A stretch of 64,000 nt of DNA from Mizuhopecten yessoensis (lineage: Eukaryota). The position numbers and the translations under genes were made by a program. The notes beneath the pieces are model-generated. The model made no database searches, was not told the DNA's origin, and worked only from the letters and a program-made list of their open reading frames with translations. Of the stretch, positions 12,985 through 46,681 are shown piece after piece. Numbering within the stretch: the stretch's first letter is position 1; each line of letters begins with the position of its first letter. The stretch covers positions 1,904,453 through 1,968,452 of the forward strand of contig NW_018408899.1 of NCBI RefSeq assembly GCF_002113885.1, in the 5' to 3' direction.

Positions 12985-13049
12985 TCATCTGTCTTCTAGC
13001 TGGCATGTTGAGAAGAGATCTTCTAAAACCTGTCTATCCAAATTTTTAC
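12985..13049 (-). CDS. ZNG1: ZNG1 terminal coding exon 14 ([20 protein letters not shown])
   Basis: G[RK]NLD motif; TGA at 12987-12985. Confidence 0.9.
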
Positions 13050-19000: not shown

Positions 19001-22000
19001 TTCATCCTTGATGCAGGCCCAGTGCACTGCACCATAATAACTTCAATTTACCATGGAAAGTATTAGAGAAACATAATCTACATGTATCATTCCTGTATGA
19101 TGCAGACAGAGAAATTCTGTGTCAGATTTAAATACTCCTCAGAAGCCCTGTTCTAAACTAAACAAGAGATCCCAGAGGGATCTTGGCGCCCACCATTATA
19201 CCATCTTCATTAGTTCTTTGTCAGTTCGATCTTTTCTCTTTTTTTTCTCTAATCTGTTTGATCGAGTCATGTTAACAGTAAATTCACCTTGAGGTAACTT
19301 TTGATCTAAACCTAATACTGCTGTGTATAAAAGACAACCTTCAAAGTGAATTTGTCATTTCATATATTTACTTAAAAGTACAGTACTTAATGTGAAAGAA
19401 ATAGAACTGATCATTGTAATATGAGAAAGATCCGGGGGGGGGGGGGGGGGTTTTCTTCCTTCGGGCATTTGTTTCTATGATCAGTCTCAAAATATAACAT
19501 GCACAACGAGGGATCACGGGGAACCTACAGAAATAGCACTAAATGTCAAAAATCGAAGATGGCCGCCGGGAAATAGCACTAACAAACCTTAACTGTCAAA
19601 ATCAAAGATTTGTTTATCCGATCAGTCTCATAAGAAGACATGCACAACTACATACCAAGGGGAACCTACATGTTAAATTTGAGAAAGATCTTTCCAGTAC
19701 TTATAGAGAAATAGCGATAACAAACCTTCACTGTAAAAATCCAAGATGGCTGCCTGTCGGCCATTTTGTTTAATTGATTTCTCAAAATTAAACATGCACA
19801 ACAACAGATCAAGGGAGTCTACATAACAAATTTGGGAAAGATCCCTAAAGTACTTCCTGAGAAATAGCGATAACAAACCTTTAACGTCACAACCCAAGAT
19901 GGTGGCCTGTCAGCCATTTTGTTTATTCGATCAGTCTCAAACTTAAACATGCACAACTGCATACCAAGGGGAACCTACATATAAAATTTGAGAAAGGTCT
20001 CTATAATACTTCCTGAGAAATATCGATAACAAGAATTGTTTAAGGTCGGACGATTGACGACTGACCGCGAACCACGGACGCAGGGCGATTTGAATAGCCC
20101 AGCCCACCATCATCTGATGGTGGCCTAAAAAGCTTACTCTACATTTGAGCTATCTCTGTCTTTATCACAAGGGGTGATAGATTCTGTCAATCCATATATG
20201 GACTATTCTGCGGTATATTATCAGGCCCTGTATGTTACACGACACAGGCCTAGGGGGGATGGGGGGCAAGATTTATCGGACGATTAACAAATGGTACTGG
20301 TAACCGTAGTGATTTTTAACAATTTCAAATAATTTATCACTTTGTCATAAAAACACAAAAGCATGCATTTCCCACAAATTTTACCGGACATCATTTTTTG
20401 GTAAACACCATCCATTGTTCTTTCCCTATCAGTGCTTAATTCCTTTACTAATGATTAAAACGAACTTAGTTCTATAAAATGTTGTTGATCAGACCTATAT
20501 TACACATCAAGTTTAGTAAAATATAAAACTATCATCTGATGTTCTATACCTTGTTGCTTCATTCACAGATCCATCTTCCTTTTTCTCCTTCAGATGCTGT
20601 AAATGCCACAAGTGGAATGTTAAATCAACTGGTATATTTGCAACTACATGTAACACCACATTGGCATAAAATTAAAACTCTTATAATGAAATTGTAAAAA
20701 GTGCAATTTTCCCAACTATACTTTTGTTGTCAATCTTTTCAATTTTCAATAACCAGCACACTGATTCTATTTCTTTAAAATCTGAATATGAATATTTTGA
20801 GAATTTAAACCTCCTATTACATACCTGACTGCAGTATTTGCCATCAACCATAGTGATAATACCTGAAAATGGAGAGAAAAAGTAACTAACAACAAGACAC
20901 CCAAATGCCTTAAAAACCTCATCTCGTATTTTTTTATCTGAAATATTTAAAATATGATACATGTATATACATTGTATAAGAATGATAAAGGTTTGGCAAC
21001 AGGGGCATAACTCCCAAAGAAATATCTGGAACCATTTTTTTTTAAAACCTGGTTAACATTGATTTACCTGTGCTCAAGGAGTAGGATTTTGACAATTTAA
21101 CTCTATTTTAATGGGCCCCACCCCTAAAATCCTCCATTTATACAATGTTGAGTCTCCTTGGCACAATGGTGCTCCAAACCAAAAACCAAACTAGAACTGT
21201 AAGCCAAAGGCTAACTTATACCCCCCCCCCCCAAATTTGCCCATTAGTTTTAGGGAGGTTGATTGGGCAAGCAGTTTTCAACAAAGGGCAATGACTCCTT
21301 AAAGAAGGGTCAAACTGAAAAAAAATAACACCTGGATGCACAACATCCGGTGGTAGTTATGATCCTATCTGAAAACTTTCATTGATATTGGCCCAGTAGT
21401 TTTCGAGAGGTTGTCCGGGCAAGCATTTTTCAACAAAGGGACATAACTCTGTAAAGAAGGGTCAGAATGAAAAAATAATACATGGATGCACAACTTCAGG
21501 TGGTATACCATATCTTGAAACTTTCATTGAAATTGATCCATAACTTTAGAAGGATTTGTCCGGACAAAAAGTTATAGGATTTTTTCAACAAGGCGCCATA
21601 ACTTCGTTAAAAACGGTCAAAATGAAAAAAGGAGGTGTCCGGACAAACTTTATCTACGGACAAGACAAACGGACGGACAAGCTGATTCATGTCCTGCTGG
21701 GTGTCTTAGGCAGTATGTTTCAGTGAGGTAGCACTATAAAGTCGGCATCAGTTCCGCGCTATCACAGTGAGACAAACACGAACATACCGCAGCCTCCCAA
21801 GACACAGCCATACACTACATGCAAGCATCTTGCACACAGGGGAGGCCCTCCTTAAATGACCATAGCTGTTGATAGGATGTTAACAATACTTAACCAAACC
21901 AATCACAGAACAATGAGTAGCATTTGTTGGCATTTCTACCAACTTGCAATAGATACAGGAGTGCTGGATTAATATGGTAAACATAACTAATGCTTTCTAC

Positions 22001-25000
22001 AAGTGACAGGGTGATGTTCTTAAAGAAATAAAATTGAGGACAAACACAATTTGCAGCAGAATATTTATTTAATACGCTAGATATATGTTGTATATGGAAT
22101 TTGTTAGGGTGTGAAAGAAGTATGTTTTGTGTTCTTGTCCTGTACTCTATTTGCAAGTATTTTATTTTCCCATTGCCCTTCCTATTTATTTATTTATTGT
22201 TTGACTGATGGATGTTGAATGAGGACCCTCCTGTGTGAGGACACCATATTGTTCAAGGGCTCCCCAACCCTGGTATCCACTATCAAAATATTTGTATATG
22301 TATATATATATATCTTCTGCGAAGCAGTATATGTATATATATATACATATTTATGAAAAAAATGTCTGGAGGAATAAAAATATTTGTAAATCCATGCACA
22401 TACTCTGCCAATCATCGCTCCTCAGAGACTGGGCTCTACTCAAGCGTATAGTAGGCCAATCATGGCTCCTTATATAGACTGGGCTCAATCCATACATGTA
22501 TGTATCGTCTGCCAGACATGGCTCCTTAAAGACAGGTTTCTTTTTATATAATCTGTCAAACATGGCTCCTTAAAGACCAGGCTTTATCCATCAGTTTAGT
22601 CTGCCAAACATGGCTCCTAAGAGACTAGGCTCTATCCATGTGTATATAGTCTACCAATCATGGTCCCTTCGAGACTGGGCTCCATCTGTGTGTGTAAAGT
22701 CTACCAATCATAGTCCCTTAGAGACTGGGCTCCATTCGTGTGTATATAGTCTACCAATCAGACAGAGTCCCTTAGAGACTGGGCTCCATCCATGTGTTTA
22801 TAGTCTACCAATCATGGTCTCTTAGACACTGGGCTCTATCCATGTGTATAGTCTGCCAATCATAGTCCCTTAGAGACTGGACTCTATCCATGTGTTTATA
22901 GTCTACCAATCATGGTCCCTTAGAGACTGTGCTCTATTCGTGTGTATATAGTCTACCAATCATAGTCCCTTAGAGACTGGACTCTATCCATGTGTATATA
23001 GTCTACCAATCATGGTCCCTCAGAGACTGGACTCTATCCATGTGTTTATAGTCTACCAATCATGGTCCCTTAGAGACTGGACTATATCCATGTGTTTATA
23101 GTCTACCAATCATAGTCCCTTAAAGACTGGACTCTATCCATGTGTATATAGTCTACCAATCATGGTCCCTTAGAGACTGGACTCTATCCATGTGTTTATA
23201 GTCTACCAATCATGGTCCCTTAGAGACTGGACTCTATCCATGTGTTTATAGTCTACCAATCACGGTCCCTTAGAGACTGGACTCTATCCATGCAATTAAT
23301 CGTCCAATCATGGCTTTTCAGAGGCTGCGCTTTACCATGTGTACAGCCTGCCAAACATTGCTCCTCAGAGACTTGGCTCTTTCCATGTGTATTGTATTCA
23401 AAGCATGGCCCCTTAGAGTCTGGGTTCTGTCCATGAGTACAGTCAGCCAAACATCGCTCCTCAGAGACTTGGCTCTATCCATGTAGATACATGCATGTAG
23501 TCTGCCAATCATGGTTCCTCAGATGGTCTCTGTCCATGTGTTAAATCTGCCAAACATTGCTCCTTCAAGACTTGGCTCTATCCATGAGTAAAGTCTGCCA
23601 AACATGGCTCCTTAGAGACTGAGCTCAACCATCCATATAGTTTGTAAAACATGGCTCCTTAGAAACTGGGTTGTCCATGCATATAGTCCGCCAGACATAT
23701 CCCTAAAGACTGAGCTCTATCGAAAGGTATAGTCTGCCAAACATGTTTCTTAAGAGACTAGGACCATCCATGTGTAAAGTCTGCTACCTTAGAATCAATA
23801 CATGTGTGATCATGTAAAACATTACTCCTCAGAGACTTGGCTCTATCCGCACATATAATATGCAAATCATTGCTCCTTAAAGACTGAGCTGTATCCAAAT
23901 GTAAAATCTGCCAAACATGGCATCTTACAGACTGGGTTCTGTCTATAGGTACAGTCAGTCAAACATTGTACCTTGGAGACTTGGCTTTATCCATGCGTAT
24001 GTTTTTCCGAAAATGGCTCCTTAGAGACTGGGTTCTTTCCATGTGCATATAGTTTGCCAAACATGGTACCTCAGACACTGGGTACTATCCATAGGTAACG
24101 TCTGCTAAACATGGCTCCTAATTAAACAGGGATGGAGATTAGGATTCATCCCTGCATATGATATGTAAATCATGTTTCCTAAGAAACTGGGCTCTATCAT
24201 CATGTCATACCAACATGCGTTCACTAATGACATATTTCATCGCCAAATAGCCATGTAACTGATTTTACACGTCAGATAGGTATATATTATAAGGAAAGGT
24301 ATATTAAACTCTAGCCTCATGATCCCCATTACCAGTAATAGGATGCCCCAATATAAGCGGTTGTATGGACACCATGCAGTTGAAAATTCAGTGCTTCGCA
24401 TGAAAACCAATTAAAGGTTTAATGAATGTTACAGCAAATGTGAATCATTTCAACATATCCATCAATTAAAAACATAAATGGGGAGGATAGTCTCCTGTTA
24501 GCTCAGATGAATAAGTCGATCAGAATCAATATCACTGACTTATTACACAAGGGAGACGGCAATGCAAATGATTAACTATTGTCGGTCAAAGATAATTAAA
24601 CTGGTATTTATTATTTACTTTGAAGCATATTTCCTGACAATATCTTACATTTGAACCAAATGATTGGATTAGGCAATCACATGTCCAAAGGATGGGTCTA
24701 TACGTATGCTGTTTTCAGACATAACTAATAGATGGACAAATCTATCCGTGCCTGCTTCATGTTATTTATACCCAGCAAGTCATTCATATTGAATGAACTC
24801 ATAGATTGACAATTGTTTGCAATAACAGATCTCTTGACAACTTAAAACGGTGACAGCATACACAACAGGTGTTAACTACGAAACATTTAGGAAACGTTTC
24901 AGTGCTCTAAAGAACAGACCAAGTGATACATTGATGCACATATAGGCTGTTATTCTGTAGGAAGTGTATTTATGTACAGTGAACAACAGTACATGTATGT

Positions 25001-28000
25001 CGAGCCATGTTCCGAGTACCTTACATCATGTTCATGGTAGTCTGTCTACATATCATCAGTGCTAATACGATGGACGACGTGAAAACATTGCTGGCGGACC
25101 TGATGGGGAACTATTCGGTGGAGGTTCGACCTGTAAAGGACCAGAGTATGCCGGTATATGTTGATGTCGGCATGAGTCTCATATCCATCAATGACTTCAA
25201 TGAAGTGACCGGAGTTATTTCAGTTGTTGCTGTTATATCTATTTCTTGGAGGGATGAAAGTCTGGTGTGGAATCCCTGGAGTTATAACAATACAACACTT
25301 CTAACATTTTCACAAAAACAAATATGGGTTCCAAAAATGTACTTGGTGAACCCAGCAAGTGAGTTTAAACCCATCAGCAATAAGCATTTTAAAGTCACTG
25401 TATTAGCCAATGGTTTTGTTAATTGGGCCCCTGGAGGGGTACTTCAAGCCACTTGTACACCTGATGTTTCTAAATTCCCATTTGATGTACAGACATGCAC
25501 AATTTTACTAAATTCATATGGATACGGTACAACACAGGTTTCTCTGACCACGCAGGTACCAACGATTAATTTCAGTTTCTTCTCAACTAACACTGCCTGG
25601 GACATTATATCAACTAAAACCATCGTAAACTCGATCATAGTCACCGATATTGCTTCATTTTCCATCACCATGAGCAGGAGACCGTTGAACTTCATAGTCA
25701 GTGTTGTGATCCCAATCATCATGTTGTCTCTGGTCAATCCGTTTGTATTCATTCTACCGTTCAATTACGGTGAACGAACGTCGTACAGTATCACAGTTCT
25801 TCTAGCGTTCACGGTGTATATGACAGTGGTAAGTGACAGGATGCCGGCCTCATCCGATCCAATCTCCCAGTTATCGTACTATCTACTCTCAATGCTTGGT
25901 CTTAGTGTTCTTATCGTAACCATGAATATATTTCAAATCAGAACATACAGCAAAGATGACAACCAGGAGCCAGTTCCACAGTGGATGAAGAAGTTTGTGA
26001 TGAATTGCAAGAAAATTTGCCAAAGGGGCAAAGCGGATAGCAAATTTAAACTGCAACAGGACATAAAACAAACTTCAAGCAGAAATGAACCTGTCAAAAA
26101 CAACAAAATCATTCGTTTACATTCAATCGATGAGACAGATATTGCAAGCAAACAAGCAACTCCAAAAGAAAACGACGGAAGTCAAACTGACTCATTACAG
26201 CACGAAAACGTCACTTGGCATACTATTGCTCAATATACAGACAAAGCTTATTTTGTTGCATTTTTGGTTTTCACGGGTGTTTCATCTTTGGGATATTTCA
26301 TGGGAGTTATCATGTGAATTATTTCTGAATTATTCACTTGATTGTACTGCTGCTGGTATATTTTGTGTTTTGAAAACTACATGTTTTAATTCATCAAAGT
26401 AACAATTGTTATTTTGAAGAAATGTGTTGTGGAACAAAATAGTTATTCATAACCCTGTTTCTACAGTGAAGCTGACAGGGCACAAATTAAACACAGAGTA
26501 GATGTATGTGTTAAATGTATTGATAAGGTTTTATCAGATCTTTGTTTTTTACAATACGGGATAGAAGAAGATTGGTTAACAAATTGGTATTCGCAGGAAA
26601 AGGAGGAAGGGAATTATAGGAACTATAATGATCCCTCACATGATATGTGTAATTATTAATGTTGAAATAAATTTCGTGGAGCACGCAGATATACAATTTC
26701 CCAACAGGAATTAACACATTCACCAAGGAACTCATTCGGGGATTGTGTGACAGACAGTTAAACATTCAAATGGATATTTCATTACATAGACCAAATCAAT
26801 GGAAATCAGTTTAGACGTTAAAATGTGATGCTATGCTTTATTTAATGAGTTATGTATAATTATTTTAATCATATCGTCATATTACCACCAGAAAATCATT
26901 TACAATTATAGCAATAGCTAGGATGAAGTCTCTTGATGATAAAATGGGATCATAAATAAAATCAATCTTGACAATGTTTATTATAACAAGAGGCCCATAC
27001 CGAGTCTATACACATACACATCTATTTGTCATGTATATGATGCCCTAAGCAAACATATCACTCTCTCTGTCTTGTACATGACATCTTAAAAACACATACA
27101 ACTCTCTCAAGACTTGGCTCTTTCTACCCGTTTTGTTTAACAAACATGTCTCTAAAAGGCTTGGCTCTATATATTCGTACAGTCTGTCAAAAATGGCTCC
27201 TTAGAGACTCGGCTCTATCTATCCATAAAGTCTGTCAAACATGACTCCTTAGAGACTCGGCTCTATCCATGCATATAGTCTGTGAAACAAGATTCCTAGT
27301 CTCTGTCTTGTAAGGGTCTTAATTTTTGATACCATCAAGATGTTATTCCGTAATGAAAATTCTAATTGAATTTGAATAAATTTCAAACAACAGTTATTGA
27401 TAAAATATTCTAGCCTATTGTTAAGAATAATCTACAGAAGAGGATTTGTTTTTGAAACCTTGGCCTATTGGTCACAAATCGGTACTGCCATTCTGGCCAT
27501 GACGAATGCGAAAAACAATGATGGTAAAATTAGGTTGTCTTTGGTCATATAGATGCAAGCAGCTGCCTTTCTCACATTCGGTTCCTGAGCTTTTTTGAAA
27601 AAACAATGTTAACAAGTAAATTGCTTGCAGACAGATGAAGCAATAGGACAGACAAAAGACAACCATGATAGGTCACACGTGACCTCATCTCAGGGGACGT
27701 TAAAATCTGTGTTAAGGATACCCATCAAATTTACAACACAAAACCTATCAACGATAGTCAGTCAACTTTAGAAAGCTTATTTTCATGTGTATGCTTGGTG
27801 TTTAAAACTTTGTAAATAACTACATACTGTAACTGATCTGCCAATAATCATGTACACAGACTATCCTAGGGAGTTGTACAGCAGGTATTTTCCAGTTTAT
27901 TTCGTTTATTTCACATTCAGTTTGTCATGATTACATTCACATCAAAAACTGTATATACGTCATGAATTATCAGATTTGATAATCATCATGTCATACCAAT

Positions 28001-31000
28001 ATGGATTCAATAATGACATATTCTAACAGGGTAATAGCCACTATAATAAGGATATGGTGTCTGTATGGATACTAATGGGTTGGAAATGCATTGCTTTGCA
28101 TGAAAATCAGACTTGCTGGTGACCATGTGATTCAGACTTCAGGGATCCAGGAATCAGATTCTGAGAGTAGTGTATAATGATCCTCACATTATATGTGTAA
28201 TGATTAATGTTGAAATAAATTGTGCGCAGCACGCAGATATACAATTTCCCAACACGAATGAACACAATCAACACGAAAGTCCTTTTGGGGTTGTGTGACA
28301 GACGGTTAAACAATCAAATGGATATTTCGACCCAATCAATGGAAATCATTTTCGACATTAAACTGTGATGCTTTGCTGTATTTTACAAGTTATGTATAAT
28401 TAATATATCGCTATATTACCACCAGAAAAGAATTCACAATTATTACACTAGCTAGAATGAAATCCCCTGATGATTAAATGGAATCATCCATGAAATCAAT
28501 CCTGATAATGTTTATTTTAACAAGAGATCCAAATCGAGTAAACGCATACAAATATATTTGTTATGTATATGATGCTTTAAGAACACAAACAACTCTCGAG
28601 ACTGTACTCTTTCTATCCGTATAGTCTGCCAAACATGGCACTCAGAGATTGGGCTATATCCGTATAGACTGCCAAACATTTTTATTTTTTTCATATTTTT
28701 TTCAGACAATCTTATACTTGAGGTACTGTCTGAGGATGGAATGCATCAGCTCCGTTCCTTTACATACTCTCTTAATCAAGAATACGACATATTCAAATTG
28801 TATCCGATACTTTATGCACCTCTGTTCTGCAAGAAGGCTTTGAATTAAGCTAGATGTATCTTACCAGATTTTTTTTATTTAATTCGTTTAAATAACCAGT
28901 TGATCATTAATGCAAAATTTGGTTCACATATTTAACTTGCATAAAGTTACACATAGAAAAATCAATCTACAATATATTGACCGGAATTAATTGAAAAGGG
29001 GATTGGGGAGAGAAAATTGGTTTACTTAATTTTAATTCATAATCTTTGATAAAAGAGGCTTCCCTGTCATACTTTTTTGCTATGTTTCTTTCGATATTAT
29101 ATGGTGTTTTCAGTTTATTGATCAGAGTAGTAGGTAGGTAAAGTTCTTTACAAAAACGCTTTTGACAATATATGTAGTTCTTCATTTTTAGAATTATGAC
29201 ATTTTCTGCCCTGTTATTCAGATGTTGATTTTGTGTTGTTTTACCAGAAATAAAATCCTTTTTACATATATTAAAAGTCACATTACAAGTAGTTTGAATC
29301 CAAATTTGGAAAGCAAGAATTAAATTTTGGACTTTATTACATTCCCATAGTACATGCTGAATAGTTTCTTTTTCTATGAAGCAAAAATTACACATTGAAA
29401 ATTGAACCAAATTAATCTTTTTCAAAAAGGTGTTCGTAACTAAATTGTGATGATTTATTCTAAATTGCAGCCATTGTCGTTTTGAATTTGTATTAGTGTC
29501 AAAAGGTAGTTTGTATGTTTTCTTCCATTCCTCAAATAGTATATTTCCAAATATATTATTCCACTTTATTTGACCTATAGGCAATACATAGTTTTTGTTC
29601 AGCACATTGGACATATCTTTTGTACCCTTTTTATGTTTGATAATTATATTAATGTACAGTGGTTTCGATGGTAGTGTAAGCTTTTTTTCAAAGTTCCAGC
29701 CTAATCTTCTTATTGCAAAAATGAGACCATTATAATCAATAAAGTTAGTATTTAAATTATTAATTTCATTAAACTCATTTAGTTGAAGGAAACTGCCATC
29801 TTCCTTAGTAAGATCATTTATAAAAAACACACCTTTATCAAACTACTGCTTATAATACACATTATTATTGCCTATTTTGATTAAATCATTACACCAAATG
29901 GGTAGAGATAATATTTGTTCTGGCCGAGATATATCAATTTTCACCCTTAATGTATTCCACGCACTAGGAACATCAATCCAAAATTTGTTATGAAGTCCAT
30001 TTTTGATAACATATTCAATATATATCTATTTCCTAAAGTTAACAGTTTATTCTTATTAATTTTTGTAAACAGTACTGTCTGCCATGTTGATTTTAGAGCC
30101 ATTTCAAAATGTTTGATATCAAACATTTCAAACCACCTTCTTCATGATGTTTGACAATGACATCTACTTTTACTTTAGCTATTGGACTTCCCCAAAGGTA
30201 TTTATAAAACATATTATGGATTCTCTCATTGCAGTGTGGTTAGGTAAAGGTAATCCTATGAATAAATGTGTAAGTATTGGTAAAAGTAGTGATTTTATTA
30301 CAGTAATTCTGCCTATCGGAGTTATATATCATCTATTCCCTCGGTTAATCAATGACTTACATTTCTAAATTTGGTCTGAAATTGAATTAAAACTATTTTA
30401 TTAAGGCCAACATCAAAGTGAATTCCTAACAGATTAAAATGTGTTGACCCCCATGATAGAGCAAGATTATTGACTAATTTTTCTGTACTATAATTTTTAC
30501 TCCCTATCCATATTACATGGCTCTTATAGATGGAGCTTTATCTATCCTATGGTCTGTCAAACATGGCTCCTTAGAGATTGAGCTTAATCCTTCGATATAG
30601 TCTGTCAAACATGGCTCCTTAGAGACTTGGCTCTATCTATCCAAATAGTCTGCCAAACGCTGCTCGTTGGAAACTTGTCTCTATCAATCCGTATAGTCTG
30701 CCGAACATGGCTCCTTAAGATTGAGCTTAATCCGTCGATATAATGTGCCAAACATGGCTCTTTAAGGACTTGGCTCTATCTATCCAAATAGTCTGCCAAA
30801 CGCTGCTCGTTGGAAACTTGCATGGCTCTATCCATCCGTATAGTCTGTCGAACATGGCTCCTTAGAGATTGAGCTTAATCCATCGATATAGTCAGCCAAA
30901 CATGGCTCCTTAGAGATTTGGCTCTATCTATCCAAATAGTCTGCCAAACGCTGCTCGTTGGAAACTTGGCTCTATCCATCCGTATAGTCTGTCGAACATG

Positions 31001-34000
31001 GCTCCTTAGAGATTGAGCTTAATCCGTCAATATAGTCTGCCGAACATGGCTCCTTAGGGATTGAGCTTAATCCGTCAATATAGTCAGCCAAACACAGCTC
31101 CTTAGAGACTTGGCTCTATCCATTTGTATAGTCTGACAAACATGGCTCCTAAGAGACTTGGCTCTATCCATCCGTTTAGTCAGAAAAACATGGCTCCTAA
31201 GAGATTTGGCTCTATCCATCCATATAATCTAACAAACATGGCTCCTAAGAGACTTGACTCTATCTATCCGTATAGTCTGAGTAGCATGGCTCCTTAGAGA
31301 CTGGGCTCCGTCCGTCCGTATAGTCTGTTAAACGTGGCTCGTTTGAAACTTGGCTCTAGATCTATCCATCCGTATAGTCTGACAAACATGGCTCCTAAGA
31401 GATTTGGCTCTATCCATCCGTTTAGTCTGACCAACATGGCTCCTAAGAGACTTGGCTCTATCCATCCGTATAGTCAGACTAACAAACATGGCTCTTAAGA
31501 CACTTGGCTCTATCCATCCGTTTAGTCTGACAATCATGGCTCCTTTGAGACTGGACTCCGTCCATACGCATAGTCTGTTAAACATGTCTCGTTGGAAACT
31601 TGGCTCTGTCCATCTGTATAGTCTGACAAACATGGTGCCTAAGAGACTTGGCTCTATCCATCCGTTTAGTCTGACCAACATGGCTCCTAAGAGACTTGGC
31701 TCTATCCATCCGTATAGTCAGACTAACAAACATGGCTCCTAAGAGACTTGGCTCTATCCATCCGTTTAGTCTGACAATCATGGCTCCTTTGAGACTGGAC
31801 TCCGTCCATACGCATAGTCTGTTAAACGTGTCTCGTTGGAAACTTGGCTCTATCCATCCGTATAGTCTGACAAACATGGTGCCTAAGAGATTTGGCTCTA
31901 TCCATCCGTATAGTCTGACAAACATAGCTCCTTAGAGACTCGGCTCTATCTTTCCGTAAAGTCTGTCAAACATGGCTCCTTAGAGACTTGGCTCTATCAA
32001 TGCGTATAGTCTGTGAAACAAGATTCCTAGTCTCTGTCTTGTAAGGGTCTTAATTTTTGATACCATCAAGATGTTATTCCGTAATGAAAATTCTAATTGA
32101 ATTTGAATAAATTTCTAGCAAAAGTAAACCAGATCTAACTAAAATCTTTATTGATAAAGTATCTTGGGACTAACGGGTAATTTGTTCTAGCCTATTGTTA
32201 AGAATAATCTACAGAAGAGGATTTTTGAAACCTTGGCCTATTGGTCACCAATCGGTACTGCCATTCTGGCCATGACGAATGCGAAAACAATGATGGTAAA
32301 ATTAGGTTGTCTTTGGTCATATAGATGCAAGCAGCTTCCTTTCTCACATTCGGTTCCTGAGCTTTTTTGAAAAAACAATGTTAACAAGTAAATTGCTTGC
32401 AGACAGATGAAGCAATAGGACAGACAAAAGGCAACCATGATAGGTCACACGTGACCTCATCTCAGGGGACGTTAAAATCTGTGTTAAGGATACCCATCAA
32501 ATTTACAACACAAAACCTATCAACGATAGTCAGTCAACTTTAGAAAGCTTATTCTCATGTGTATGCTTGGTGTTTTAAACTTTGTAAATAACTACATACT
32601 GTAACTGATCTGCCAATAATCATGTACACAGACTATCCTAGGGAGTTGTACAGCAGGTATTTTCCAGTTTATTTCGTTTATTTCACATTCAGTTTGTCAT
32701 GATTACACACACATCAAAAACTGTATATACGTCATGAATTATCAGATTTGATAATCATCATGTCATACTAATATGGATTCAATAATGACATATTCTATCG
32801 GGGAAATAGCCACTATAATAAGGATATGGTGTTTGTACGGATACTAATGGGTTGGAAATGCATTGCTCTGCATGAAAATCAATTAAGGGTTTAAAATGTT
32901 ATATCAAATGTAGATTTTTTCTCAAAATTTGCACACCAGGTCATTTTGAAGTTAATGTGAACTGTTTCAACATAGACATCAATAAAAACATAATTGGGAA
33001 GGATAGTCTCCCATTAGCCTATCTTAGATTAATATTTCATATCGGCCAATCAGAATCAATATCACTGCTTCATAATTACACAGGGGAGACGGCTATGCAA
33101 ATTATTAAATATTGTCGGTCAAAGATGACTAAACAGGCATTTAGTATTTACTTTGAAGACATGGTCTTGGCGCATATTAATCAATATTTCCTGAAAATAT
33201 CCAGGCTTAGCTGTGGAACTAAATGAATTATTAGGACATCATATTGACACAGGATGAGTCAATACGTATGTTGTTTTCAGTCGTAACCAATAGAAGGCAG
33301 GATTATGACAAACATAACCGTGCCTGCTTCATATTGTTTATACCCAGCATGTCATTCATATTGAACGAACCCAGAGCTAAGCAATTTTTTACAATAACAG
33401 TTACTTACTTGACAACGAAAATCTGCGACTGAACTTCTAACAAGTGTTAACTACGACATCTTCATTACTTTTGACTGTTCGTAATAACAGACTTGAGTGA
33501 TAGATTGATACAGATATAGGCTGTTTGTTTTGTAGGAAGTGTATTTATTAATGTTAGGCAGAGCCATGTTCCGCGTATCTTACATCATGTTCATGGTAGT
33601 CTGTCTACATACCGTCAGTGCTAATACGATGGACGACGTGAAAACATTGCTGGCGGACCTGATGGGGAACTATTCGGTGGAGATTCGACCTGTAAAGGAC
33701 CAGAGTATGCCGGTATATGTTGATGTCGGCATGAATCTCATATCCATCAATGACTTCAATGAAGTGACCGGAGTTATTTCAGTTGTTGCCGTTATATTTC
33801 TTTCTTGGAGGGATGAAAGTCTGGTGTGGAATCCCTGGAGTTATAACAATACAACACATCTAACATTTTCACAAAAACAAATATGGGTTCCAAAAATGTA
33901 CTTGGTGAACCCAGCAAGTGAGTTTAAACCCATCAGCAATAAGCATTTTAAAGTCACTGTATTAGCCAATGGTTTTGTTAATTGGGCCCCTGGAGGGGTA

Positions 34001-37000
34001 CTTCAAGCCTCTTGTACACCTGATGTTTCTAAATTCCCATTTGATGTACAGACATGCACAATTTCACTAAATTCATATGGATACGGTACAACAAAGGTTT
34101 CTCTGACCACGCAGGTACCAACGATTAATTTAAGTCTCTTCTCAACTAACACTGCCTGGGACATCATATCAACTAAAACCATCGTAAACTCCGACGTATT
34201 CACCGATTTTGCTTCATTTTCCATCACCATGAGCAGGAGACCGTTGAACTTCATAGTCAGTGTTGTGATCCCAATCATCATGTTGGCTCTGGTCAATCCG
34301 TTTGTATTCATTCTACCGTTCAATTCCGGTGAACGAACGTCGTACAGTATCACAGTACTTCTAGCGTTCACGGTGTATATGACAGTGGTAAGTGACAGGA
34401 TGCCGGCCTCATCCGATCCAATCTCCCAGTTATCGTACTATCTACTCTCAATGCTTGGTCTCAGTGTTCTTATCGTAATCATGAATATATTTCAAATCAG
34501 AACATACAGCAAAGATGACAACCAGGAGCCAGTTCCGCAGTGGATGAAGAAGTTGGTGATGAATTGCAAGAAAATTTGCCAAAGGGGCAAAGTGGAAAGC
34601 AAATTTAAACTGCAACAGGATATAAAACAAACTTCAAGCAGAAATGAACCTATCAAAAACAACATCATTCGTTTAGATTCAATCGATGAGACAGATATTG
34701 CAAACATACAAGCAACTCCAAAAGAAACCAACGTTATTCAAACTGACTCATTACAGCACGAAAACGTCACTTGGCATACTATCGCTCAATATACAGACAA
34801 AGCTTATTTTGTTGCATTTTTGGTTTTCACGGGTGTTTCATCTTTGAGATATTTTATAGAAGTTACCACATGAATTATTTCAAATGCATTACAGGTGGTA
34901 TACTTTGTAATTTTTTTTTAAATTTTATGTAATAATTCATGTGATTTTTCAGAAATGTGTTGTAAGCAAAATAACTAGTCCTAAGCCTAACAGACCACCA
35001 TCTGGACAGCTCTACAGGAATGTTCCTACAGTATGGCTGACAGGGCACCAATTAAACACAGAGCAGATGTATACGGTGTATAAAAAAACATAATTTAGGG
35101 AACTATAATACAGGAAAATTTCTTTTTTGACTTTTAAGCATTAAATAAAGTTTCATCAGATTGAATTTCTTCATCTTTGTTTTATGCTGAATTTTTACAA
35201 TACGGGATAGAAGAAAAATGATTAACAGAACAGGAGGAAGGGTAATATGGGAAAATGTAATTATGGTAAATATAATGATCCCTCACATTATATGTGCAAT
35301 TTAGTAAACTGTGATGCTTTGCTGTATTTCACCGGTACCGTTTTATTTTTATATAATCATATTATCGCCAAAAATCATGTTTGTGATGTATTTAAGAATG
35401 CATACAACTCTCTCTGTCATGTTTGTGATTTCGTTAAGAATGCATACAACTCTCTCTGTCATGTTTGTGATGTCGTTAAGAATGTATACAACTCTCTCTG
35501 TCATGTTTGTGATGTCTTTAAGAATGCATACAACTCTCTCTGTCATGTTACTGATGTCGTTAAGAATGCATACAACTCTCTCTGTCATGTTTGTGATATC
35601 TTTAAGAATGCATACAACTCTCTCTGTCATGTTTGTGATGTTGTTAAGAATGCATACAACTCTCTCTCTGTTATGTTTGTGATGTCTTTAAGAATGCATA
35701 CAACTCTCTGACGTGTTTGTGATGTCATTAAGAATGCATACAACTCTCTCCATCATGTTTGTGATGTCGTTAAGAATGCATTCAACTCTCTCTGTCATGT
35801 TTGTGATGTCGTTAAGAATGTATACAACTCTCTCTGTCATGTTTGTGATGTCGTTAAAAATGCAAACAACTCTATGACGTGTTTGTGATGTCGTTAAAAA
35901 TGCAAACAACTCTCTCACGTGTTTGTGTTGTCGTTAAGAATGCATACTACTCTCTCCATCATGTTTGTGAAGTCGTTAAGAATGCATTCAACTCTCTCTG
36001 TCATGTTTGTAATGTCGTTAAGAATGCATACAGCTCTCTGACGTGTTTGTGATCTCGTTAAGAATGCATACAACTCACTCTCTGTCGTGTTTGTGATGTC
36101 GTTAAGAATGCAGACAACTCTCTCTGTCATGTTTATGATGTCGTTAAGAATGTATACAACTCTCTCTGTCGTGTTTGTGATGTCGTTAAGGATGCATACA
36201 ACTCTCTCTGTGATGTTTGTGATGTCGTTAATAATGTATACAACTCTCTCTGTCATGTTTGTGATGTCGTTAAGAATGCATACAACTCACTCTCTGTCGT
36301 GTTTGTGATATCATTAAGAACAAATACAACTCTTTCTGTCTTCAAGTGTCTTGTTTGTGATGTTTTTAACAACACACAAATCTCTCCGTCATGAATGTGA
36401 CGTCTTTAAGATCACATACATATTTCAGTCATGTGTGTGATATCTTTAAGAATTCAAATATTCCTTTATTTTTATTTTTTCTGTCACATGTTACCAAATA
36501 TCACGACTGGAAATCTCAAAAGAAGAAAGCCATTTTGGTATCCCTGTACCACTGCCAAAAATTGTAACTAAGAGATATTGGCTAAATAAGCTTTAATGAT
36601 TATTTCTAAAAGGAAGACCATATTTTAGGGGACTTGTGTGAAAAATATAAAAACCATGATTAAACAAAATATATTATCAACAACAGTATTTTGAGTGTAA
36701 AACTTTAGCCAGGCCAGACTGGCATTCCAACCCTGGACTTCAGGTTGTTGTACTATCATTCTAACAGACTCAGCTATCTTGTCAACGGAAGTGCCCTAGC
36801 TGACATATAACTGTGAACTAATTACTGCATTACGAAAAACTTTGGGGTAGTCGGACAGGGATCCTTAATTTTCTCTTAGATCAACAGATCACTTTATCAA
36901 ATATACACTACATACTAGGACTGTAGGATGAATACTATGTTTACTACTGTGCTAGGATAAAATGTTTAACACTCCAACATGTACACATTTTAGACACTCT

Positions 37001-40000
37001 TCTTTCAAAAAAGACATTTAACAAAGTAATGACTGGGGATGCTGCATGAAAACAGCTAGATTATAAAATAACGTGAATTTCAAAATATGTTTTTTTGGAA
37101 AAGTATTAAACAATATAGCTTCATTATTATGACAGCAAAAGATCATTTTTATGAATATTTTGTCCATTTGGGGTTAGAATATTTTGATATTAAAAAGATT
37201 TCTGATTCTGTAAGCAGGGTATGTCAGGTACATTTTGTAATTTCAAACAACACATTGACATAAAAACATTTTTCACCAGGTGATCTTAATCTGTGCAAGA
37301 AAATATTTCATTTAGTGAAACAAAAAACAAATTGAAATGTAAGTAAGAATAATATTACCATCCAAAAATATGTCGCTGCAGAGCTCTTCATCCAGCCAAA
37401 ATATGGAAGCAATAGGACCTATGGAGAGGACAGGTTTAATTAATGACATCACTCAAATTTAAAATCCACCTCAAGTTTTCAAAACATTAAAACATGTCAG
37501 TAGTTACTCTGCTACTTTGATTATACATTTCACAAACTGCATCTCTTTTATTTTCATTAAAAAAAAAAAAATCCGGACAATGATGTATTGTCCTGAAAAT
37601 ATGTTTTTTAATGAAAATATGGATGAAAAATTCCTTAAAAATACATAGCAAGAGGCCCATGGGCCTAAACGGTCACTTGAGTCCTACAGTGTTTATTTTT
37701 GTTGTTGAAATATGTACCAATTTGAGTAAATAATTATTAAGTATAACGTTAACTCAAGTTTGTCAGGACCATGAGCTGATCATTCCTAGACCGATTTTCA
37801 GTTAGATTGGCCTATAGAACTTGTTTTTAAAGCTCAGGTGACCAAAAAAGTTAATTGTTACAATTTGCTTTTGTTTTGCAATGATTTGTTATTGTCACTT
37901 TACTTAACATCATATTTCAGCTAATATCTCTGGATGGTTTTTTTAGCATATTTTTTCTCCAAAAATATGATGTATGTACTATAATTTGTCATGTAGAAAC
38001 ACACATATGTTCTGAAGAGCTTTTATTATGATGCCTCAAAGGGAGCAAATGTTTCCTTCTAATTATTGCACAAAAAATCACAAAAAAACACAAATAATCA
38101 CTGTAAATAACCCCCTTTTTTCACGCCTCTGCGATTCCGTTTTTGCGTATTGCAGAGTTATCTTCTCTTGGGAGCAGATATTGATTGTTACGTCATTGGC
38201 TTGTGTGAGAAATTTACGTCGTTTTCTCAAAAATTGATGACGTTACTCTCAAAAACAAGTGACATAACAATCAATACCTGCCCCCAAGAGAAGATAACTC
38301 TGCAATACGCAAAGACGGAATAGGACCCCCGAGGGCATAAACATCAGCATTGATGGAGCCCCCGTAAAATAAAGCAATTGGTGGGATAACAGCTAATTAT
38401 ATAACCCTGATGGTTTCCAGCAAGTAATTTCTTGTTTACATTGTGGCTGTATCTTTAGTAGAGGTGAGAACTGCATCTCATTTTACTATCCCAATAGTTT
38501 TCAAGTTTTATTCGAACTTTAGGCCCTTGGCCCATCAGTATACAATGCATATTACACAAATCATGGACGATGTACAAAGAATGAAGACAATCAAATTCCA
38601 ATATAATACCCTTCATTTGTTTGTTTCCCTCATAGATGACTTTTCCTAGTACATGTATACACAATTCTTTAATATTATGGACACTCAATAACTGAACGAC
38701 TTTAAACAGAGATGGTACAATATAGTACTGCGATAGTTGTTTCACTCTCCCGACAGTATTGGTTTAAACAATATTTCATTTACAAATATGCAGTACATAA
38801 TGTAAATATTATACAGAATGTAATGTTAGCGATCTGGCAACAAGAGTAGGCTCTTATATTAAGCCATCTCCCACCAGTATTGTGATAGTATTCCGATAGT
38901 TGTTTCACTTTACTATTGTATTGCGAAAGTTGTTTACTATCATAAAAGTATTATGATAACTGTTTTACTATCAATATAGTAGTGTGATATGTAGTTTATA
39001 TAAATATTGCAATAGTTTTTGAAATCTGATTTTGTATCATTAACTGATTTGAAAGAAATTTGTCATTTTCATGTCATTTTCATATGTCATTCCAGGTGGT
39101 GTTTTGTCATCTTCAGTGTCTTGTATTCTTGGAGTTATAAATTTGAATTCATTAATAAAAGAAAAACATATTAAAATAATTTTGTTAATTTCTTTGAAAC
39201 AATCAAATAAAAGAAAAGACACAGTCAAGTACACATATTCCTATGTAAGTCTTTAAACACCGTTTTGAAAGAAGAGATTTGTAGTGAAAATAATATAGAA
39301 AATACTTCTAATATGGACTAGTATTACTCCACCTGCTAATATGAATACAGGCAACACGATGACACCAGCCATGAGCTAGAAGGCCATGCAGGTACCGGTC
39401 GTGGCTGTGATACTCTGTGATCAGCACAATGTCGGATACATAGTGATGCAGTAACAATGGAGGGGAACATACTCTGCTTACAAGGTCTATTTACGTAAAA
39501 GGGTAACGGTATACACCTCCAGTCTAATAAATTAATACTTGATTTGTACAATTAAACAAGCTTTGGCATCACCATGCCTTTTGTTATGGGAGTTTCAGAG
39601 TGCACTGTTTGCAAGTGAATCAGCTTGTCACTAAGTGTTCCGATTGAACTTCCGGGGTTTTGTTAGCAATTTCAATCTAGGTTTTCCCAGAAGATTTAGC
39701 CAGCCGTGCTTTTGAGGACAGAGTAATCAAGATGTATATCAAAAGAAAGCTTTTGTCACTATCAATACTTCAGTATTACTAGTACTGTTGCAATAGTTTT
39801 CAACTTTTGTAATCCATATCAATGTATTGATATCCTGGTGATAAACTTACAATACATTGATAGTATGATGTATTGTTACACTCCTAATAGACAGAATGTG
39901 GGACAAACAAATGCTGTCTTACGGATAATGAAGGCATCTGGAAAGAGGCTCACCCATTTTATATACTTTTTGAACGTTCTACCTACTTTTCATTTTCCGT

Positions 40001-45149: not shown

Positions 45150-46681
45150 AGGTAAGAACACTGCAATTGCAACACAAACATGAACATAACAGCTACACTA
45201 ATATCACTTTCACTTCTTGCCACAACCAAGTCGAACACATTCCACAAACATAGAACACATATACACAACAACACACTCGGCTTCGACGAAAACAGACTCG
45301 CCCAACACGAAGAACACGACGCACCACTCACACTATTCCCAGCAATATCCACACGTCTCAAACACAAACACATTAAACCAAGCAACTCTTACATCTTTAT
45401 CCTCCTACTCGCAATATCATCAGACACTGAACTAAGCCCAGGGCCCAGAGCATGCGGAACATGCAACAAAACCGTCACATGGCAAACAAATGCTATATGC
45501 TGCGACACATGCGATACATGGTACCACACCAACTGCCAAGGCATGAAAACATCCTTCATGTATACTATACTGACATATCATGGGAGTGCATACAATGTGG
45601 CATGCCAAATTTTTCATCAACACTTTTCGATACCACATCAATACACTCCACAAACATATTTTCAGAACTAGATTCGATAAATTCCATAGACGACCCCACA
45701 AGCCCAGGCCCTCCAACAGCCACTTCCTCTCTCATAAAAAAACAACACACAACAACTCAACACAAACTCGACAATCCAATACGCATCACAACAATTAACT
45801 TCCAATCCATATCCAACAAAAAGCCAGACCTAGAAGAAATAATCCACGCAATCAAACCAGACATCATCATAGGTACGGAGACATGGCTAAATAGCACAAC
45901 TTCATCATACGAATACTTTCCAATAACACAGTACACAGTATATAGAAAAGACCGCACACCAAACGCAAAAGGACAAAGCCACGGTGGAGTACTACTCGCT
46001 ATCACAAACAAATACATCTCGCAACAACTTCCAGAATTAGAAACAGATAACGAATCCATTTGGGCCAACATCAAAATGTCAAACTCACATAACTTCATAG
46101 TAGATGCATACTACAGACTACCATCAGACAAAGGACATTCACTCACATAACTCGAAATATCCCTGAACAGAATAGGAACACAGAACAACACAATAACATT
46201 TATTAGCGGAGACTTCAACCTCCCACACATAGATTGGTCAAACAACACCACAACACCAGGCAAACCAGACACAACCCTATATCAACGCCTTCTAGACATC
46301 ATCGACGATAACTACATCACCCAAACCATAGACAAACCCACAAGAGGAGAACACATCCTTGACCTAACACTCACAAATCGTACATCCATCATCAATAAAC
46401 AAGAAATAGTCCCACCGATAGGCAAGGCAGATCACGACATCATATATACAGAAGCAGAGATTAGACTACAAAAATACGCCAACCACCTAGGAACATTAAC
46501 CTACTATATAACAAAGAAAACTGGGACAACATCAGAAAATTCCTCACTAATCTAAATAACAACTTTCAGGACCTAGAACATCAAAACACAGAAGACCTTT
46601 TGGTAAGTTTCAAAACAACACTCCATACATCTACAGAAAAAAACATTCCAATAAATCACTAACATACAAACACAGACTGCC
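45150..46681 (+). mobile_element. CR1/L2-group LINE ORF2, 5' part (2A-like motif, PHD finger, APE endonuclease), degenerate
   Basis: DTELSPGP, then CxxC...[13 protein letters not shown]...WECIQC (PHD, frameshifted), then INFQSI, IIGTETWL, YRKDR, GGVLLAI, YRLP, ISGDFNLPHIDW, PTRGEHILDL, DHD. Stops and frameshifts present. Confidence 0.9.

What the first reader, a model, noticed from the sequence alone, without database searches (positions are those of the whole stretch)
25007..34873. Pair of intronless, non-cholinergic nAChR-like channels hidden in a housekeeping-gene intron: candidate bivalve chemosensory receptors
Seen: two intact single-exon Cys-loop genes lie antisense within the 16.5-kb ZNG1 intron (20863-37358). 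They keep the Cys-loop, pre-M1 RR and a cation-type M2 start (GER). They have lost the ACh-binding aromatic box: loop B reads NSYGY instead of GSWTY, there is no loop C YxCC...Y, and loop C is very short and hydrophobic. Known: bivalves have large retro/tandem-duplicated nAChR expansions, and cephalopod chemotactile receptors are nAChR derivatives that lost these same residues. Inference: these may be an independently evolved ionotropic receptor for a non-ACh, possibly hydrophobic or environmental, ligand.
Basis: partly seen in the sequence, partly recalled or inferred. Interest (0 to 1): 0.8.

Follow-up and report, generated by a model that had tools for sequence, protein, structure and literature searches.

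The report
Two divergent scallop nAChR-like genes
Two intact, near-identical, single-exon acetylcholine-receptor-like channel genes lie antisense inside an intron of the scallop ZNG1 gene and have lost the acetylcholine-binding residues, but so has every one of 50 related genes sampled from this genome, so they are ordinary new members of the known bivalve receptor expansion and a sensory role is untested.

Summary
Two uninterrupted + strand ORFs (25007-26317 and 33566-34873, 92% identical) encode complete Cys-loop channel subunits. They lie antisense in a 16,496-nt GT/AG intron (20863-37358) of a cobW/ZNG1-type gene. The genome is Mizuhopecten yessoensis, and neither protein is in the public protein collection.

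The acetylcholine aromatic box is gone: loop A Tyr to Val, loop B Trp to Tyr, loop D Trp to Val, and loop C cut to a four-residue hairpin with no Cys-Cys. The pore keeps GER, the 9' Leu and the 20' Asp.

This is not special to the pair. Of 50 single-ORF relatives sampled from this genome, none has the loop C Cys-Cys, the loop D Trp or the loop A Tyr. Only the loop B Trp loss sets this clade apart. The clade is conserved in scallops (monophyletic 100/100, orthologue dN/dS 0.2-0.27) and sits in the same ZNG1 intron in Argopecten irradians.

The two ORFs look homogenised by gene conversion: 3.5% difference at fourfold sites against 20.5% in the flanks. Leftover differences cluster in loop C.

RNA support is a trace, about 0.5 FPKM or less, nearly all from copy B, tissue unknown.

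Published work already describes such intronless, tandem, binding-site-divergent bivalve nAChR genes. The scan's first readers noted similar arrays elsewhere in this genome. A chemosensory role remains untested.

The parts
25007..26317 (+). Gene A: single-exon ORF of 436 aa encoding a Cys-loop (nAChR-like) subunit. It has a signal peptide, ligand-binding domain, M1-M3, a disordered intracellular loop and M4.
   Evidence: AF2 mean pLDDT is 77.5 with the canonical pLGIC secondary structure.
33566..34873 (+). Gene B: single-exon ORF of 435 aa from the ATG homologous to A's start. In-frame alternatives are an ATG at 33551 and a GTG at 33539. It is 92% identical to A as protein and 96.3% as DNA.
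25454..25498 (+). Cys-loop of A (C150-C164, [15 protein letters not shown]) with the canonical 13-residue spacing.
25511..25528 (+). Loop B of A (NSYGYG). The cation-pi Trp is replaced by Tyr171. This change is specific to the ZNG1-nested clade, which has Y or H here.
25622..25654 (+). Loop C of A (residues 206-216). It is reduced to a four-residue beta-hairpin with no vicinal Cys and no Tyr. It is also the densest cluster of A/B differences (I210D, I211V, V212F, I215F).
25769..25837 (+). M2 pore helix of A ([23 protein letters not shown]) with -1' Glu, 9' Leu and 20' Asp. A carries a derived Tyr at -2' (S254Y, just upstream of this segment).
24437..25006 (+). Upstream flank of A, homologous to 32954-33565 upstream of B. 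It is only 79.5% identical, with 12 gap events.
20863..37358 (-). Host intron of 16,496 nt in the ZNG1-type (cobW) gene. It has GT/AG borders and contains both receptor genes in antisense orientation.
37359..37437 (-). Host exon upstream of the intron (..[26 protein letters not shown]). It is 79% identical to the A. irradians exon.
20824..20862 (-). Host exon downstream of the intron ([13 protein letters not shown]). It is 94% identical to the A. irradians exon.
42167..42289 (-). Host P-loop exon ([30 protein letters not shown]), which gives the Pfam cobW match. Further host exons lie at 42649-42741 (start Met), 41059-41163 (GCLCC motif), 40095-40202, 20549-20599, 18682-18816, 17898-17948, 17055-17141, 16566-16646, 15671-15808, 14265-14453 and 12988-13062.
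27112..28597 (+). Gene-less partial repeat unit. 27408-28109 is 97% identical to B's far-upstream 32185-32881, and 28173-28597 is 82% identical to A's downstream 26624-27065. tblastn finds no ORF remnant.

Best explanation
A and B are tandem paralogues from the large, known bivalve expansion of intronless nAChR-derived Cys-loop genes. They form a small scallop-specific clade that has sat beside or inside the ZNG1 (cobW-family) gene since before Mizuhopecten and Argopecten diverged. In both species the genes lie antisense in the same intron.

Shown: each encodes a complete pLGIC subunit. The parts present are a signal peptide, a beta-sandwich ligand-binding domain with the Cys-loop, pre-M1 RR, M1-M4, a conserved M2-M3 loop, and a pore with -1' Glu, 9' Leu and 20' Asp.

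Inferred: the product is a subunit of a cation-selective pentameric channel whose orthosteric site cannot bind ACh in the canonical way. The aromatic box is lost on both the principal and the complementary face, and loop C is a bare hairpin. Any gating would therefore come from an unknown non-ACh stimulus, or from partner subunits.

Shown: long-term purifying selection acts on the clade (dN/dS about 0.2-0.27). Within it, variability concentrates in loops B, C and F.

Shown and inferred: in M. yessoensis the two ORFs differ far less than their flanks, with sharp borders at the start and stop codons. I read this as recent gene conversion limited to the coding sequence. The remaining differences are clustered (loop C, intracellular loop, C-terminus) and mostly amino-acid-changing.

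Shown: transcription in the three RNA runs sampled is at trace level and comes almost entirely from copy B.
For: - Domains and fold: Pfam LBD and TM domains. The best solved relative is human alpha7 at E 1e-46. The AF2 model has pLDDT 77.5, with Z 29.9 and 29% identity to alpha7.
- Residue losses.
- Family norm: the own genome gives 96 scored and 363 candidate matches, mostly uninterrupted full-length frames. In 50 sampled ORFs there are 0 with Cys-Cys, 0 with the loop D Trp and 0 with the loop A Tyr. 44 keep the loop B Trp, 47 have the -1' Glu and 49 have the 9' Leu.
- Clade and synteny: the nested clade is monophyletic at 100/100, and paralogues group by species. A. irradians has two such genes between the same two cobW exons.
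- Selection: orthologue dN/dS is 0.16-0.29 at dS about 1. A versus B gives dN/dS 0.91, which is significantly above 0.22 (p 8e-6) and not different from 1.
- ORF integrity: no stop codon and a single in-frame indel. A rough estimate gives p about 0.002 under neutrality.
- Homogenisation: fourfold sites differ at 6 of 173 against 113 of 550 in the flank (Fisher 7e-9), with sharp identity steps at the start and stop codons.
- Clustering of differences: P = 0.0005.
- Loop variability: Mann-Whitney p = 2e-4.
- RNA: 8, 3 and 1 reads in three raw RNA runs. All but one lie within the ORF (one X23 read lies downstream, at 27210-27400), and they carry B's diagnostic letters.
- Literature: PMC6896357 and PMC13174522.
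Against: - No functional datum exists. ACh insensitivity is inferred from residues only, and a loop B Tyr can still make cation-pi contacts in other pLGICs (my own background knowledge, not tested here).
- Expression is about 0.5 FPKM or less, in tissues I cannot identify. Copy A has at most one read, so A could be silent.
- A versus B dN/dS is about 1, and A has derived changes at otherwise conserved sites (S254Y at -2', A241S). Both fit relaxed constraint on A.
- The gene-conversion reading assumes that the flanks evolve at about the synonymous rate.
- The 50-gene survey samples the genes most similar to A. It does not sample all Cys-loop genes of the genome.
Confidence: 0.8

Rival explanations
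1. They are peripheral chemosensory or environment-sensing ionotropic receptors. In this view they are analogous to cephalopod chemotactile receptors but evolved independently, and are gated by hydrophobic or environmental ligands at the remodelled site.
For: The ACh box is lost while the gating and pore machinery are kept. They are intronless, tandem, lineage-specific duplicates. Variability concentrates in loops B, C and F within the clade, and the A/B differences cluster in loop C. Very low bulk expression is what genes expressed in a few cells would show. Octopus CRs show the same combination of features (PMC11526382, PMC10338036, PMC13174522).
Against: No tissue information could be obtained. 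Variable loops fit relaxed constraint at a defunct site equally well. The same signature is shared by all 50 sampled paralogues, so nothing singles out this pair. Similarity to CRT1 and CRB1 is no higher than to alpha7. Jiao et al. report developmental, immune and stress-related expression for expanded bivalve nAChR genes, not sensory expression (PMC6896357).
Confidence: 0.15
2. They are accessory or structural (beta-like) subunits that co-assemble with ACh-binding alpha subunits. They would contribute no binding face, so the channel would still be cholinergic.
For: The absence of the vicinal Cys pair and a shortened loop C are what non-alpha subunits show. The pore and gating motifs are canonical. 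PMC10338036 raises a need for partner subunits as one explanation for the silence of orphan lophotrochozoan receptors.
Against: The complementary-face loop D Trp is also lost. More than 90 similar genes would be an odd number of pure accessory subunits. High variability in the binding loops is not expected of a conserved structural partner.
Confidence: 0.15
3. One copy, most likely A, or both, are transcriptionally silent young duplicates on the way to pseudogenisation. In this view the ORFs are still open only because recent gene conversion reset them.
For: A versus B dN/dS is 0.91, indistinguishable from neutral. A has 15 derived changes against B's 9, including conserved pore-mouth and M1 sites. 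RNA reads are almost all B-type, and at trace level. Neither protein is in the public collection. Jiao et al. report that many intron-poor copies show no or low expression (PMC6896357). A neighbouring repeat unit has already lost its gene.
Against: Both ORFs are intact, with no stop and one in-frame indel, where about 2 stops and about 4 frameshifts would be expected under neutrality (rough p about 0.002). The clade has been under purifying selection for dS about 1. B-type reads are confined to the ORF.
Confidence: 0.2

Closest known systems
Bivalve intronless, tandemly duplicated nAChR expansion (Jiao et al. 2019, BMC Genomics, PMC6896357)
   Same: The genes are single-exon and tandemly duplicated, and paralogues cluster by species. 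Most members are non-alpha and lack the conserved principal ACh-binding residues. Many copies have low or no expression. That paper already proposes binding of diverse ligands.
   Different: This pair is absent from the public protein collection. It is nested antisense in a ZNG1 intron, a position conserved in A. irradians. It has also lost the loop B Trp, which 44 of 50 sampled paralogues keep. It shows homogenisation limited to the ORF.
Cephalopod chemotactile receptors CRT1 and CRB1 (PDB 9e6b, 8eiz; van Giesen 2020 and Allard 2023, as cited in PMC11526382 and PMC10338036)
   Same: Both are intronless nAChR derivatives that have lost the ACh signature residues and keep a cation-channel architecture. 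In both, variability is focused on the binding pocket.
   Different: There is no evidence of a shared clade. Structure-based identity is 25% (CRT1) and 22% (CRB1), against 29% to human alpha7. For the scallop genes there are no data on ligand, tissue or function. CRs are shown to be sensory, and these genes are not.
Alvinella pompejana Alpo4, an orphan lophotrochozoan nAChR-like receptor (PDB 8bx5; PMC10338036)
   Same: Both are lophotrochozoan nAChR-like subunits without the loop C Cys-Cys and with no known agonist. Both belong to lineage-specific expansions. Fold match is Z 25.3 with 24% identity.
   Different: Alpo4 keeps the aromatic cage (F103, W159, Y199, Y205, W65 according to the paper). 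The scallop proteins have lost all of these positions and have a much shorter loop C.
Human alpha7 nAChR
   Same: It is the best sequence match (E 1e-46) and the best structural match (Z 29.9). It shares the Cys-loop, pre-M1 RR, the GE(K/R) pore start, the 9' Leu and the M2-M3 loop.
   Different: Y93, W149, Y188, C190-C191, Y195 and W55 (mature alpha7 numbering, from my own knowledge) are all substituted or deleted in A and B. The scallop genes are intronless.

Membership tests
[quoted passage not shown] | Neur_chan_LBD plus Neur_chan_memb domains above the Pfam thresholds | tested here: met
   148.6 and 152.8 bits (cut-off 26) for the LBD, and 63.4 and 61.1 bits (cut-off 28.1) for the TM domain.
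[quoted passage not shown] | Disulfide Cys-loop with 13 intervening residues and the FPFD motif | tested here: met
   [15 protein letters not shown] in both copies.
[quoted passage not shown] | Beta-sandwich extracellular domain plus a four-helix transmembrane domain | tested here: met
   AF2 model; Foldseek E 1.6e-35 to muscle nAChR; VIA Z 29.9 to alpha7.
[quoted passage not shown] | Cation-type pore: -1' Glu, no -2' Pro/-1' Ala anion motif, 9' Leu gate | tested here: met
   GER...LL...D. Ion selectivity itself was not measured.
ACh-binding nAChR subunit (alpha type) | Vicinal Cys-Cys and two Tyr in loop C | tested here: not met
   loop C is six residues shorter than in alpha7, with no Cys and no Tyr.
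ACh-binding nAChR subunit (alpha type) | Loop B Trp (cation-pi) and loop A Tyr | tested here: not met
   Trp to Tyr171; Tyr to Val114.
ACh-binding nAChR subunit (complementary face) | Loop D Trp (alpha7 W55 equivalent) | tested here: not met
   Val76.
Bivalve intronless nAChR expansion (Jiao et al. 2019) | Coding sequence in one exon | tested here: met
   uninterrupted full-length ORFs. UTR introns could not be assessed.
Bivalve intronless nAChR expansion (Jiao et al. 2019) | Tandem arrays and lineage-specific clustering of paralogues | tested here: met
   copies lie about 8.56 kb apart, arrays are present on many contigs, and paralogues group by species.
Cephalopod chemotactile receptors | Membership of the CR clade in a tree of molluscan nAChRs | tested here: inconclusive
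   The word-based searches reached no cephalopod sequences. Only structure-based identity is available: 25% and 22% to the CRs against 29% to alpha7.
Cephalopod chemotactile receptors | Expression in peripheral sensory epithelium and gating by poorly soluble ligands | not testable with these tools
   The RNA runs are coded, so their tissue is unknown, and show only trace reads.
ZNG1 / COG0523 (host gene) | cobW GTPase domain with a P-loop and the CxCC motif, plus a CobW_C domain | tested here: met
   cobW at 38 bits against a cut-off of 20.7. GAGKTTLL and GCLCC exons, 78-94% identical to the A. irradians gene annotated cobW + CobW_C. Orthology to vertebrate ZNG1 itself was not tested.

The most novel reading that the evidence does not exclude
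The ZNG1-nested clade could be a scallop-specific sensory ionotropic receptor lineage. It is the only group among 50 sampled paralogues that has also replaced the loop B Trp. In this reading, specificity is tuned in loops B, C and F, gene conversion keeps the channel scaffold uniform, selection preserves the loop C differences between copies, and the conserved antisense nesting in ZNG1 constrains or couples its expression.
Probability: 0.1. Interest if true: 0.6.

Novelty: new member of a known kind. Interest (0 to 1): 0.3.

Why it matters
Bivalves carry 100-200 nAChR-like genes, and the ligands of the divergent ones are unknown. This pair adds two apparently unannotated genes to the Yesso scallop catalogue. 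It also defines a small, syntenically anchored clade (ZNG1 intron, at least two scallop genera) that has lost every canonical ACh contact, including the loop B Trp. That makes it a compact and tractable candidate for de-orphanising the expansion. The step in divergence at the ORF borders shows that concerted evolution can make old duplicates look young. This matters when such arrays are dated or when dN/dS is read from paralogue pairs. None of this changes the current picture of the family.

Tried and rejected
- Phylogeny with octopus and squid CRs: two word-indexed protein searches, one with the single sequence and one with a 37-sequence profile, returned no cephalopod proteins. No tree with CRs could be built. 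I used structure-based identities as a weak substitute.
- Pfam on single host exons: the exons at 37360-37452, 20684-20881 and 20516-20671 gave no hit because they are too short. This was resolved with a whole-genome cobW scan and exon matching to A. irradians.
- Run X1: it was listed as 'RNA?'. It covers all 30 bins, including the intergenic flanks, and holds both A-type and B-type contigs, so I treated it as DNA and did not count it as expression. Its two 'joints' (24625 to 24735 and 24798 to 24956) mirror A/B indels and are not splicing.
- Foldseek against the PDB: it returned only canonical nAChR chains in the top 50, which says nothing about subtype.
- Zinc-related link: I considered a functional link between a Cys-loop channel and its ZNG1 host, by analogy with the zinc-activated channel ZAC. 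ZAC is only a distant fold match (Z 23.4, 15% identity), so there is no support.
- Literature search for scallop nAChR expression: it returned only toxin papers.
- Pentamer pocket modelling: not possible, because the structure tool returns no coordinates.


Full report
**What is there**

The window holds two uninterrupted + strand ORFs. Copy A is at 25007-26317 (436 aa). Copy B is at 33539/33566-34873. Both match Pfam Neur_chan_LBD and Neur_chan_memb far above threshold. They are 92% identical as proteins.

The best solved relative is human alpha7 nAChR at E about 1e-46. An AlphaFold2 model built on a 37-sequence alignment (mean pLDDT 77.5) has the canonical layout. That layout is an N-terminal helix, a beta-sandwich, M1-M3, an MA helix, a disordered intracellular loop (341-399) and M4. 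The model matches nAChR structures with Foldseek at E 1.6e-35 and with VIA-align at Z 29.9 and 29% identity to alpha7.

**The residue claims**

The alpha7 alignment and a family alignment show four changes at the binding site:
- Loop B reads NSYGYG against GSWSYG, so the Trp is now Tyr171.
- Loop C is six residues shorter. It has no Cys-Cys and no Tyr, and in the model it is a four-residue hairpin at 210-213.
- The loop A Tyr is Val114.
- The complementary-face loop D Trp is Val76.

Other motifs are kept:
- the Cys-loop [15 protein letters not shown]
- pre-M1 SRRPLNF
- the M2 helix [23 protein letters not shown], with -1' Glu, 9' Leu and 20' Asp
- an alpha7-like M2-M3 loop

One nuance: only copy A has a purely hydrophobic loop C.

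**Genome and host gene**

Paralogues elsewhere in the same assembly are 100% identical to NCBI proteins of Mizuhopecten yessoensis. The assembly has 987.6 Mb in 82,659 contigs. Neither A nor B is in the 15-billion-protein collection, and the best hit there is only 68% identical. They therefore seem to be unannotated, which fits the word 'hidden' in the finding's title.

The host gene runs on the - strand:
- A whole-genome scan with Pfam cobW hits window 42173-42268.
- Stop-free - strand segments match the exons of an A. irradians gene annotated cobW + CobW_C at 64-94% identity.
- These exons include the start Met (42649-42741), the P-loop exon (42167-42289) and the GCLCC exon (41059-41163).
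- The two exons that flank the receptor genes are ..37359 and 20862..20824.
- GT at 37358-37357 and AG at 20864-20863 confirm the intron 20863-37358 exactly.

**How special is the pair?**

A six-frame search of the own genome with protein A gave 96 scored matches out of 363 candidates. Almost all are full-length frames without stops, and many lie in tandem arrays.

I fetched 40 more of them and aligned 50 ORFs in all:

| Feature | Count among 50 |
|---|---|
| Vicinal Cys-Cys in loop C | 0 |
| Trp at the loop D position | 0 |
| Tyr at the loop A position | 0 |
| Loop B Trp kept | 44 |
| -1' Glu | 47 |
| 9' Leu | 49 |

The 'lost acetylcholine box on an intact cation-channel chassis' is therefore the norm for this gene family in the scallop. 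Only the loop B Trp to Tyr change sets A and B apart.

This matches Jiao et al. 2019 (PMC6896357). They report 99-217 nAChR genes in bivalves, mostly intronless and in tandem arrays. In oyster, only 33 of 132 are alpha-type and only 13 have conserved principal binding sites. The authors already suggest diverse ligands.

A 2026 preprint (PMC13174522) reports molluscan clades with substituted binding residues and a 'CR-like' clade that reaches into bivalves. It also raises an ionotropic chemosensory role. The scan's first readers made the same kind of note on two other pieces of this genome (s1-528058 and s1-519465).

**Evolution of the clade**

In a maximum-likelihood tree, A and B group at 100/100 support with three Ylistrum balloti and two Argopecten irradians proteins. 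Paralogues group by species. All members have Tyr or His in place of the loop B Trp.

In A. irradians the two genes lie on the + strand between the same two cobW exons as in the window. The nesting is therefore old.

In Y. balloti the gene I examined lies just 3' of ZNG1. It sits next to a partial duplicate of the last three ZNG1 exons. Linkage is kept there, but the arrangement differs.

Orthologue pairs give dN/dS of 0.16-0.29 at dS about 1, which indicates long-term purifying selection. Within the clade, extracellular variability is concentrated in loops B, C and F. Mean entropy is 0.81 in the loops against 0.48 elsewhere (Mann-Whitney p 2e-4). The most variable stretch is loop C. This fits either diversifying selection or relaxation at a disused site, and the data do not separate the two.

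**The recent history of A and B**

A and B differ at 49 ORF nucleotides (37.5 nonsynonymous and 11.5 synonymous) plus one in-frame codon indel. Overall dN/dS is 0.91. It is 1.3 in the extracellular domain and 0.46 in M1-M3. This value is far above the long-term rate (p 8e-6) and is not different from neutral.

The flanks tell a different story:
- Upstream, aligned identity is 79.5% with 12 gap events.
- Downstream, it is about 72%.
- The ORF is 96.3% identical, with sharp steps at the start and stop codons.
- Fourfold-degenerate sites differ at 3.5% against 20.5% in the upstream flank (Fisher 7e-9).

I read this as gene conversion limited to the coding sequence after an older duplication.

The remaining differences are clustered: 19 pairs lie within 6 nt against 9.8 expected (P 0.0005). 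There are patches in loop C (five changes in 8 nt), in the intracellular loop and at the C-terminus. The paralogue dN/dS is therefore not a clean measure of selection.

Given the indel and stop rates implied by the flanks, two fully open frames are unlikely under neutrality. This is a rough estimate, p about 0.002.

Polarising the differences with the other scallops assigns 15 derived changes to A and 9 to B. A's changes include S254Y at the -2' pore mouth and A241S in M1, sites that are otherwise conserved.

**Expression**

- Run X1 covers genes and flanks alike and holds both copy types, so I treat it as DNA.
- Three raw-read RNA runs gave 8, 3 and 1 reads from 11-12 million records each. 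This is roughly 0.5 FPKM at most.
- All but one of these reads lie inside the ORF (one X23 read lies downstream, at 27210-27400).
- At diagnostic positions (for example 25239, 25241, 25727, 25767, 25920) the reads carry B's letters.
- Copy A has at most one read.
- The tissues are coded and unknown to me. The libraries look unstranded, so the transcribed strand is not shown.

**Relation to the cephalopod receptors**

Structure-based identity is:

| Structure | Identity to the model |
|---|---|
| Human alpha7 | 29% |
| Octopus CRT1 | 25% |
| Alvinella Alpo4 | 24% |
| Squid CRB1 | 22% |

There is no sign of special kinship with the CRs. The resemblance is one of kind: intronless nAChR derivatives with a remodelled site. 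It is not evidence of shared descent.

**Verdict**

The genes are real, intact, conserved and very probably not ACh-binding in the canonical way. They are ordinary members of a published expansion. The chemosensory idea is neither new nor tested here.

The modest new points are:
- the apparently missing annotation
- the conserved antisense nesting in ZNG1
- the clade-specific loss of the loop B Trp
- the homogenisation limited to the ORF

The single N at window position 85 was left untouched. The retroelement at 47-51 kb was only described.

Noticed in passing
window 24437-26717 versus 32953-35273: Identity between the two repeat units steps from about 75-88% in the flanks to 92-99% exactly between the start and stop codons. 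Fourfold sites differ at 3.5% against 20.5% in the flank. This looks like gene conversion limited to the coding sequence.
   Followed up: yes
window 27112-28597: A gene-less partial repeat unit. It is 97% identical to B's far-upstream region (32185-32881) and is followed by a copy of A's downstream region (28173-28597 matches 26624-27065 at 82%). tblastn finds no receptor remnant.
   Followed up: partly
window 22390-24120, 30440-32050, 35284-36417: Three minisatellites with periods of about 50, 48 and 42 nt flank the receptor genes. The first two are about 72% alike and lie upstream of A and B respectively. The 42-nt array creates spurious ORFs at 35247-35711.
   Followed up: no
window 28967-29830 (-): A 287-aa ORF with a weak zf-RVT match (E 5e-4, below the Pfam cut-off). 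It is probably a decayed non-LTR retroelement tail lying between the repeat units.
   Followed up: no
window 47109-49556 (-): Fragmented pol of an LTR retrotransposon, with RVT_1, RT_RNaseH, Integrase_H2C2 and rve domains spread over separate ORFs. It lies in a GC-richer stretch upstream of the ZNG1 start. I only described it.
   Followed up: no
window 45180-45668 (+): A 163-aa ORF with a PHD-finger match (E 6e-6), next to the retroelement.
   Followed up: no
L013 4000-8360 (-) (Ylistrum balloti): A divergent (50-54% identical) second copy of the last three ZNG1 exons lies on the other side of the receptor gene P0001. In Y. balloti the receptor cluster therefore sits between ZNG1 and a partial ZNG1 duplicate, not in the intron.
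   Followed up: partly
window 25766-25768 (codon 254 of A): Copy A has Tyr at the -2' position next to the selectivity-filter Glu. B, all five orthologues and 17 of the wider-clade sequences in the same alignment have Ser. This is a derived change that could alter conduction or mark relaxed constraint.
   Followed up: partly
G000 C5543, C3952, C2776, C4422, C5220, C2300 and other contigs: Many further tandem arrays of full-length single-ORF Cys-loop genes are present in this genome, for example at least 9 on C5543 within 120 kb and at least 6 on C3952. A few copies carry stop codons.
   Followed up: partly
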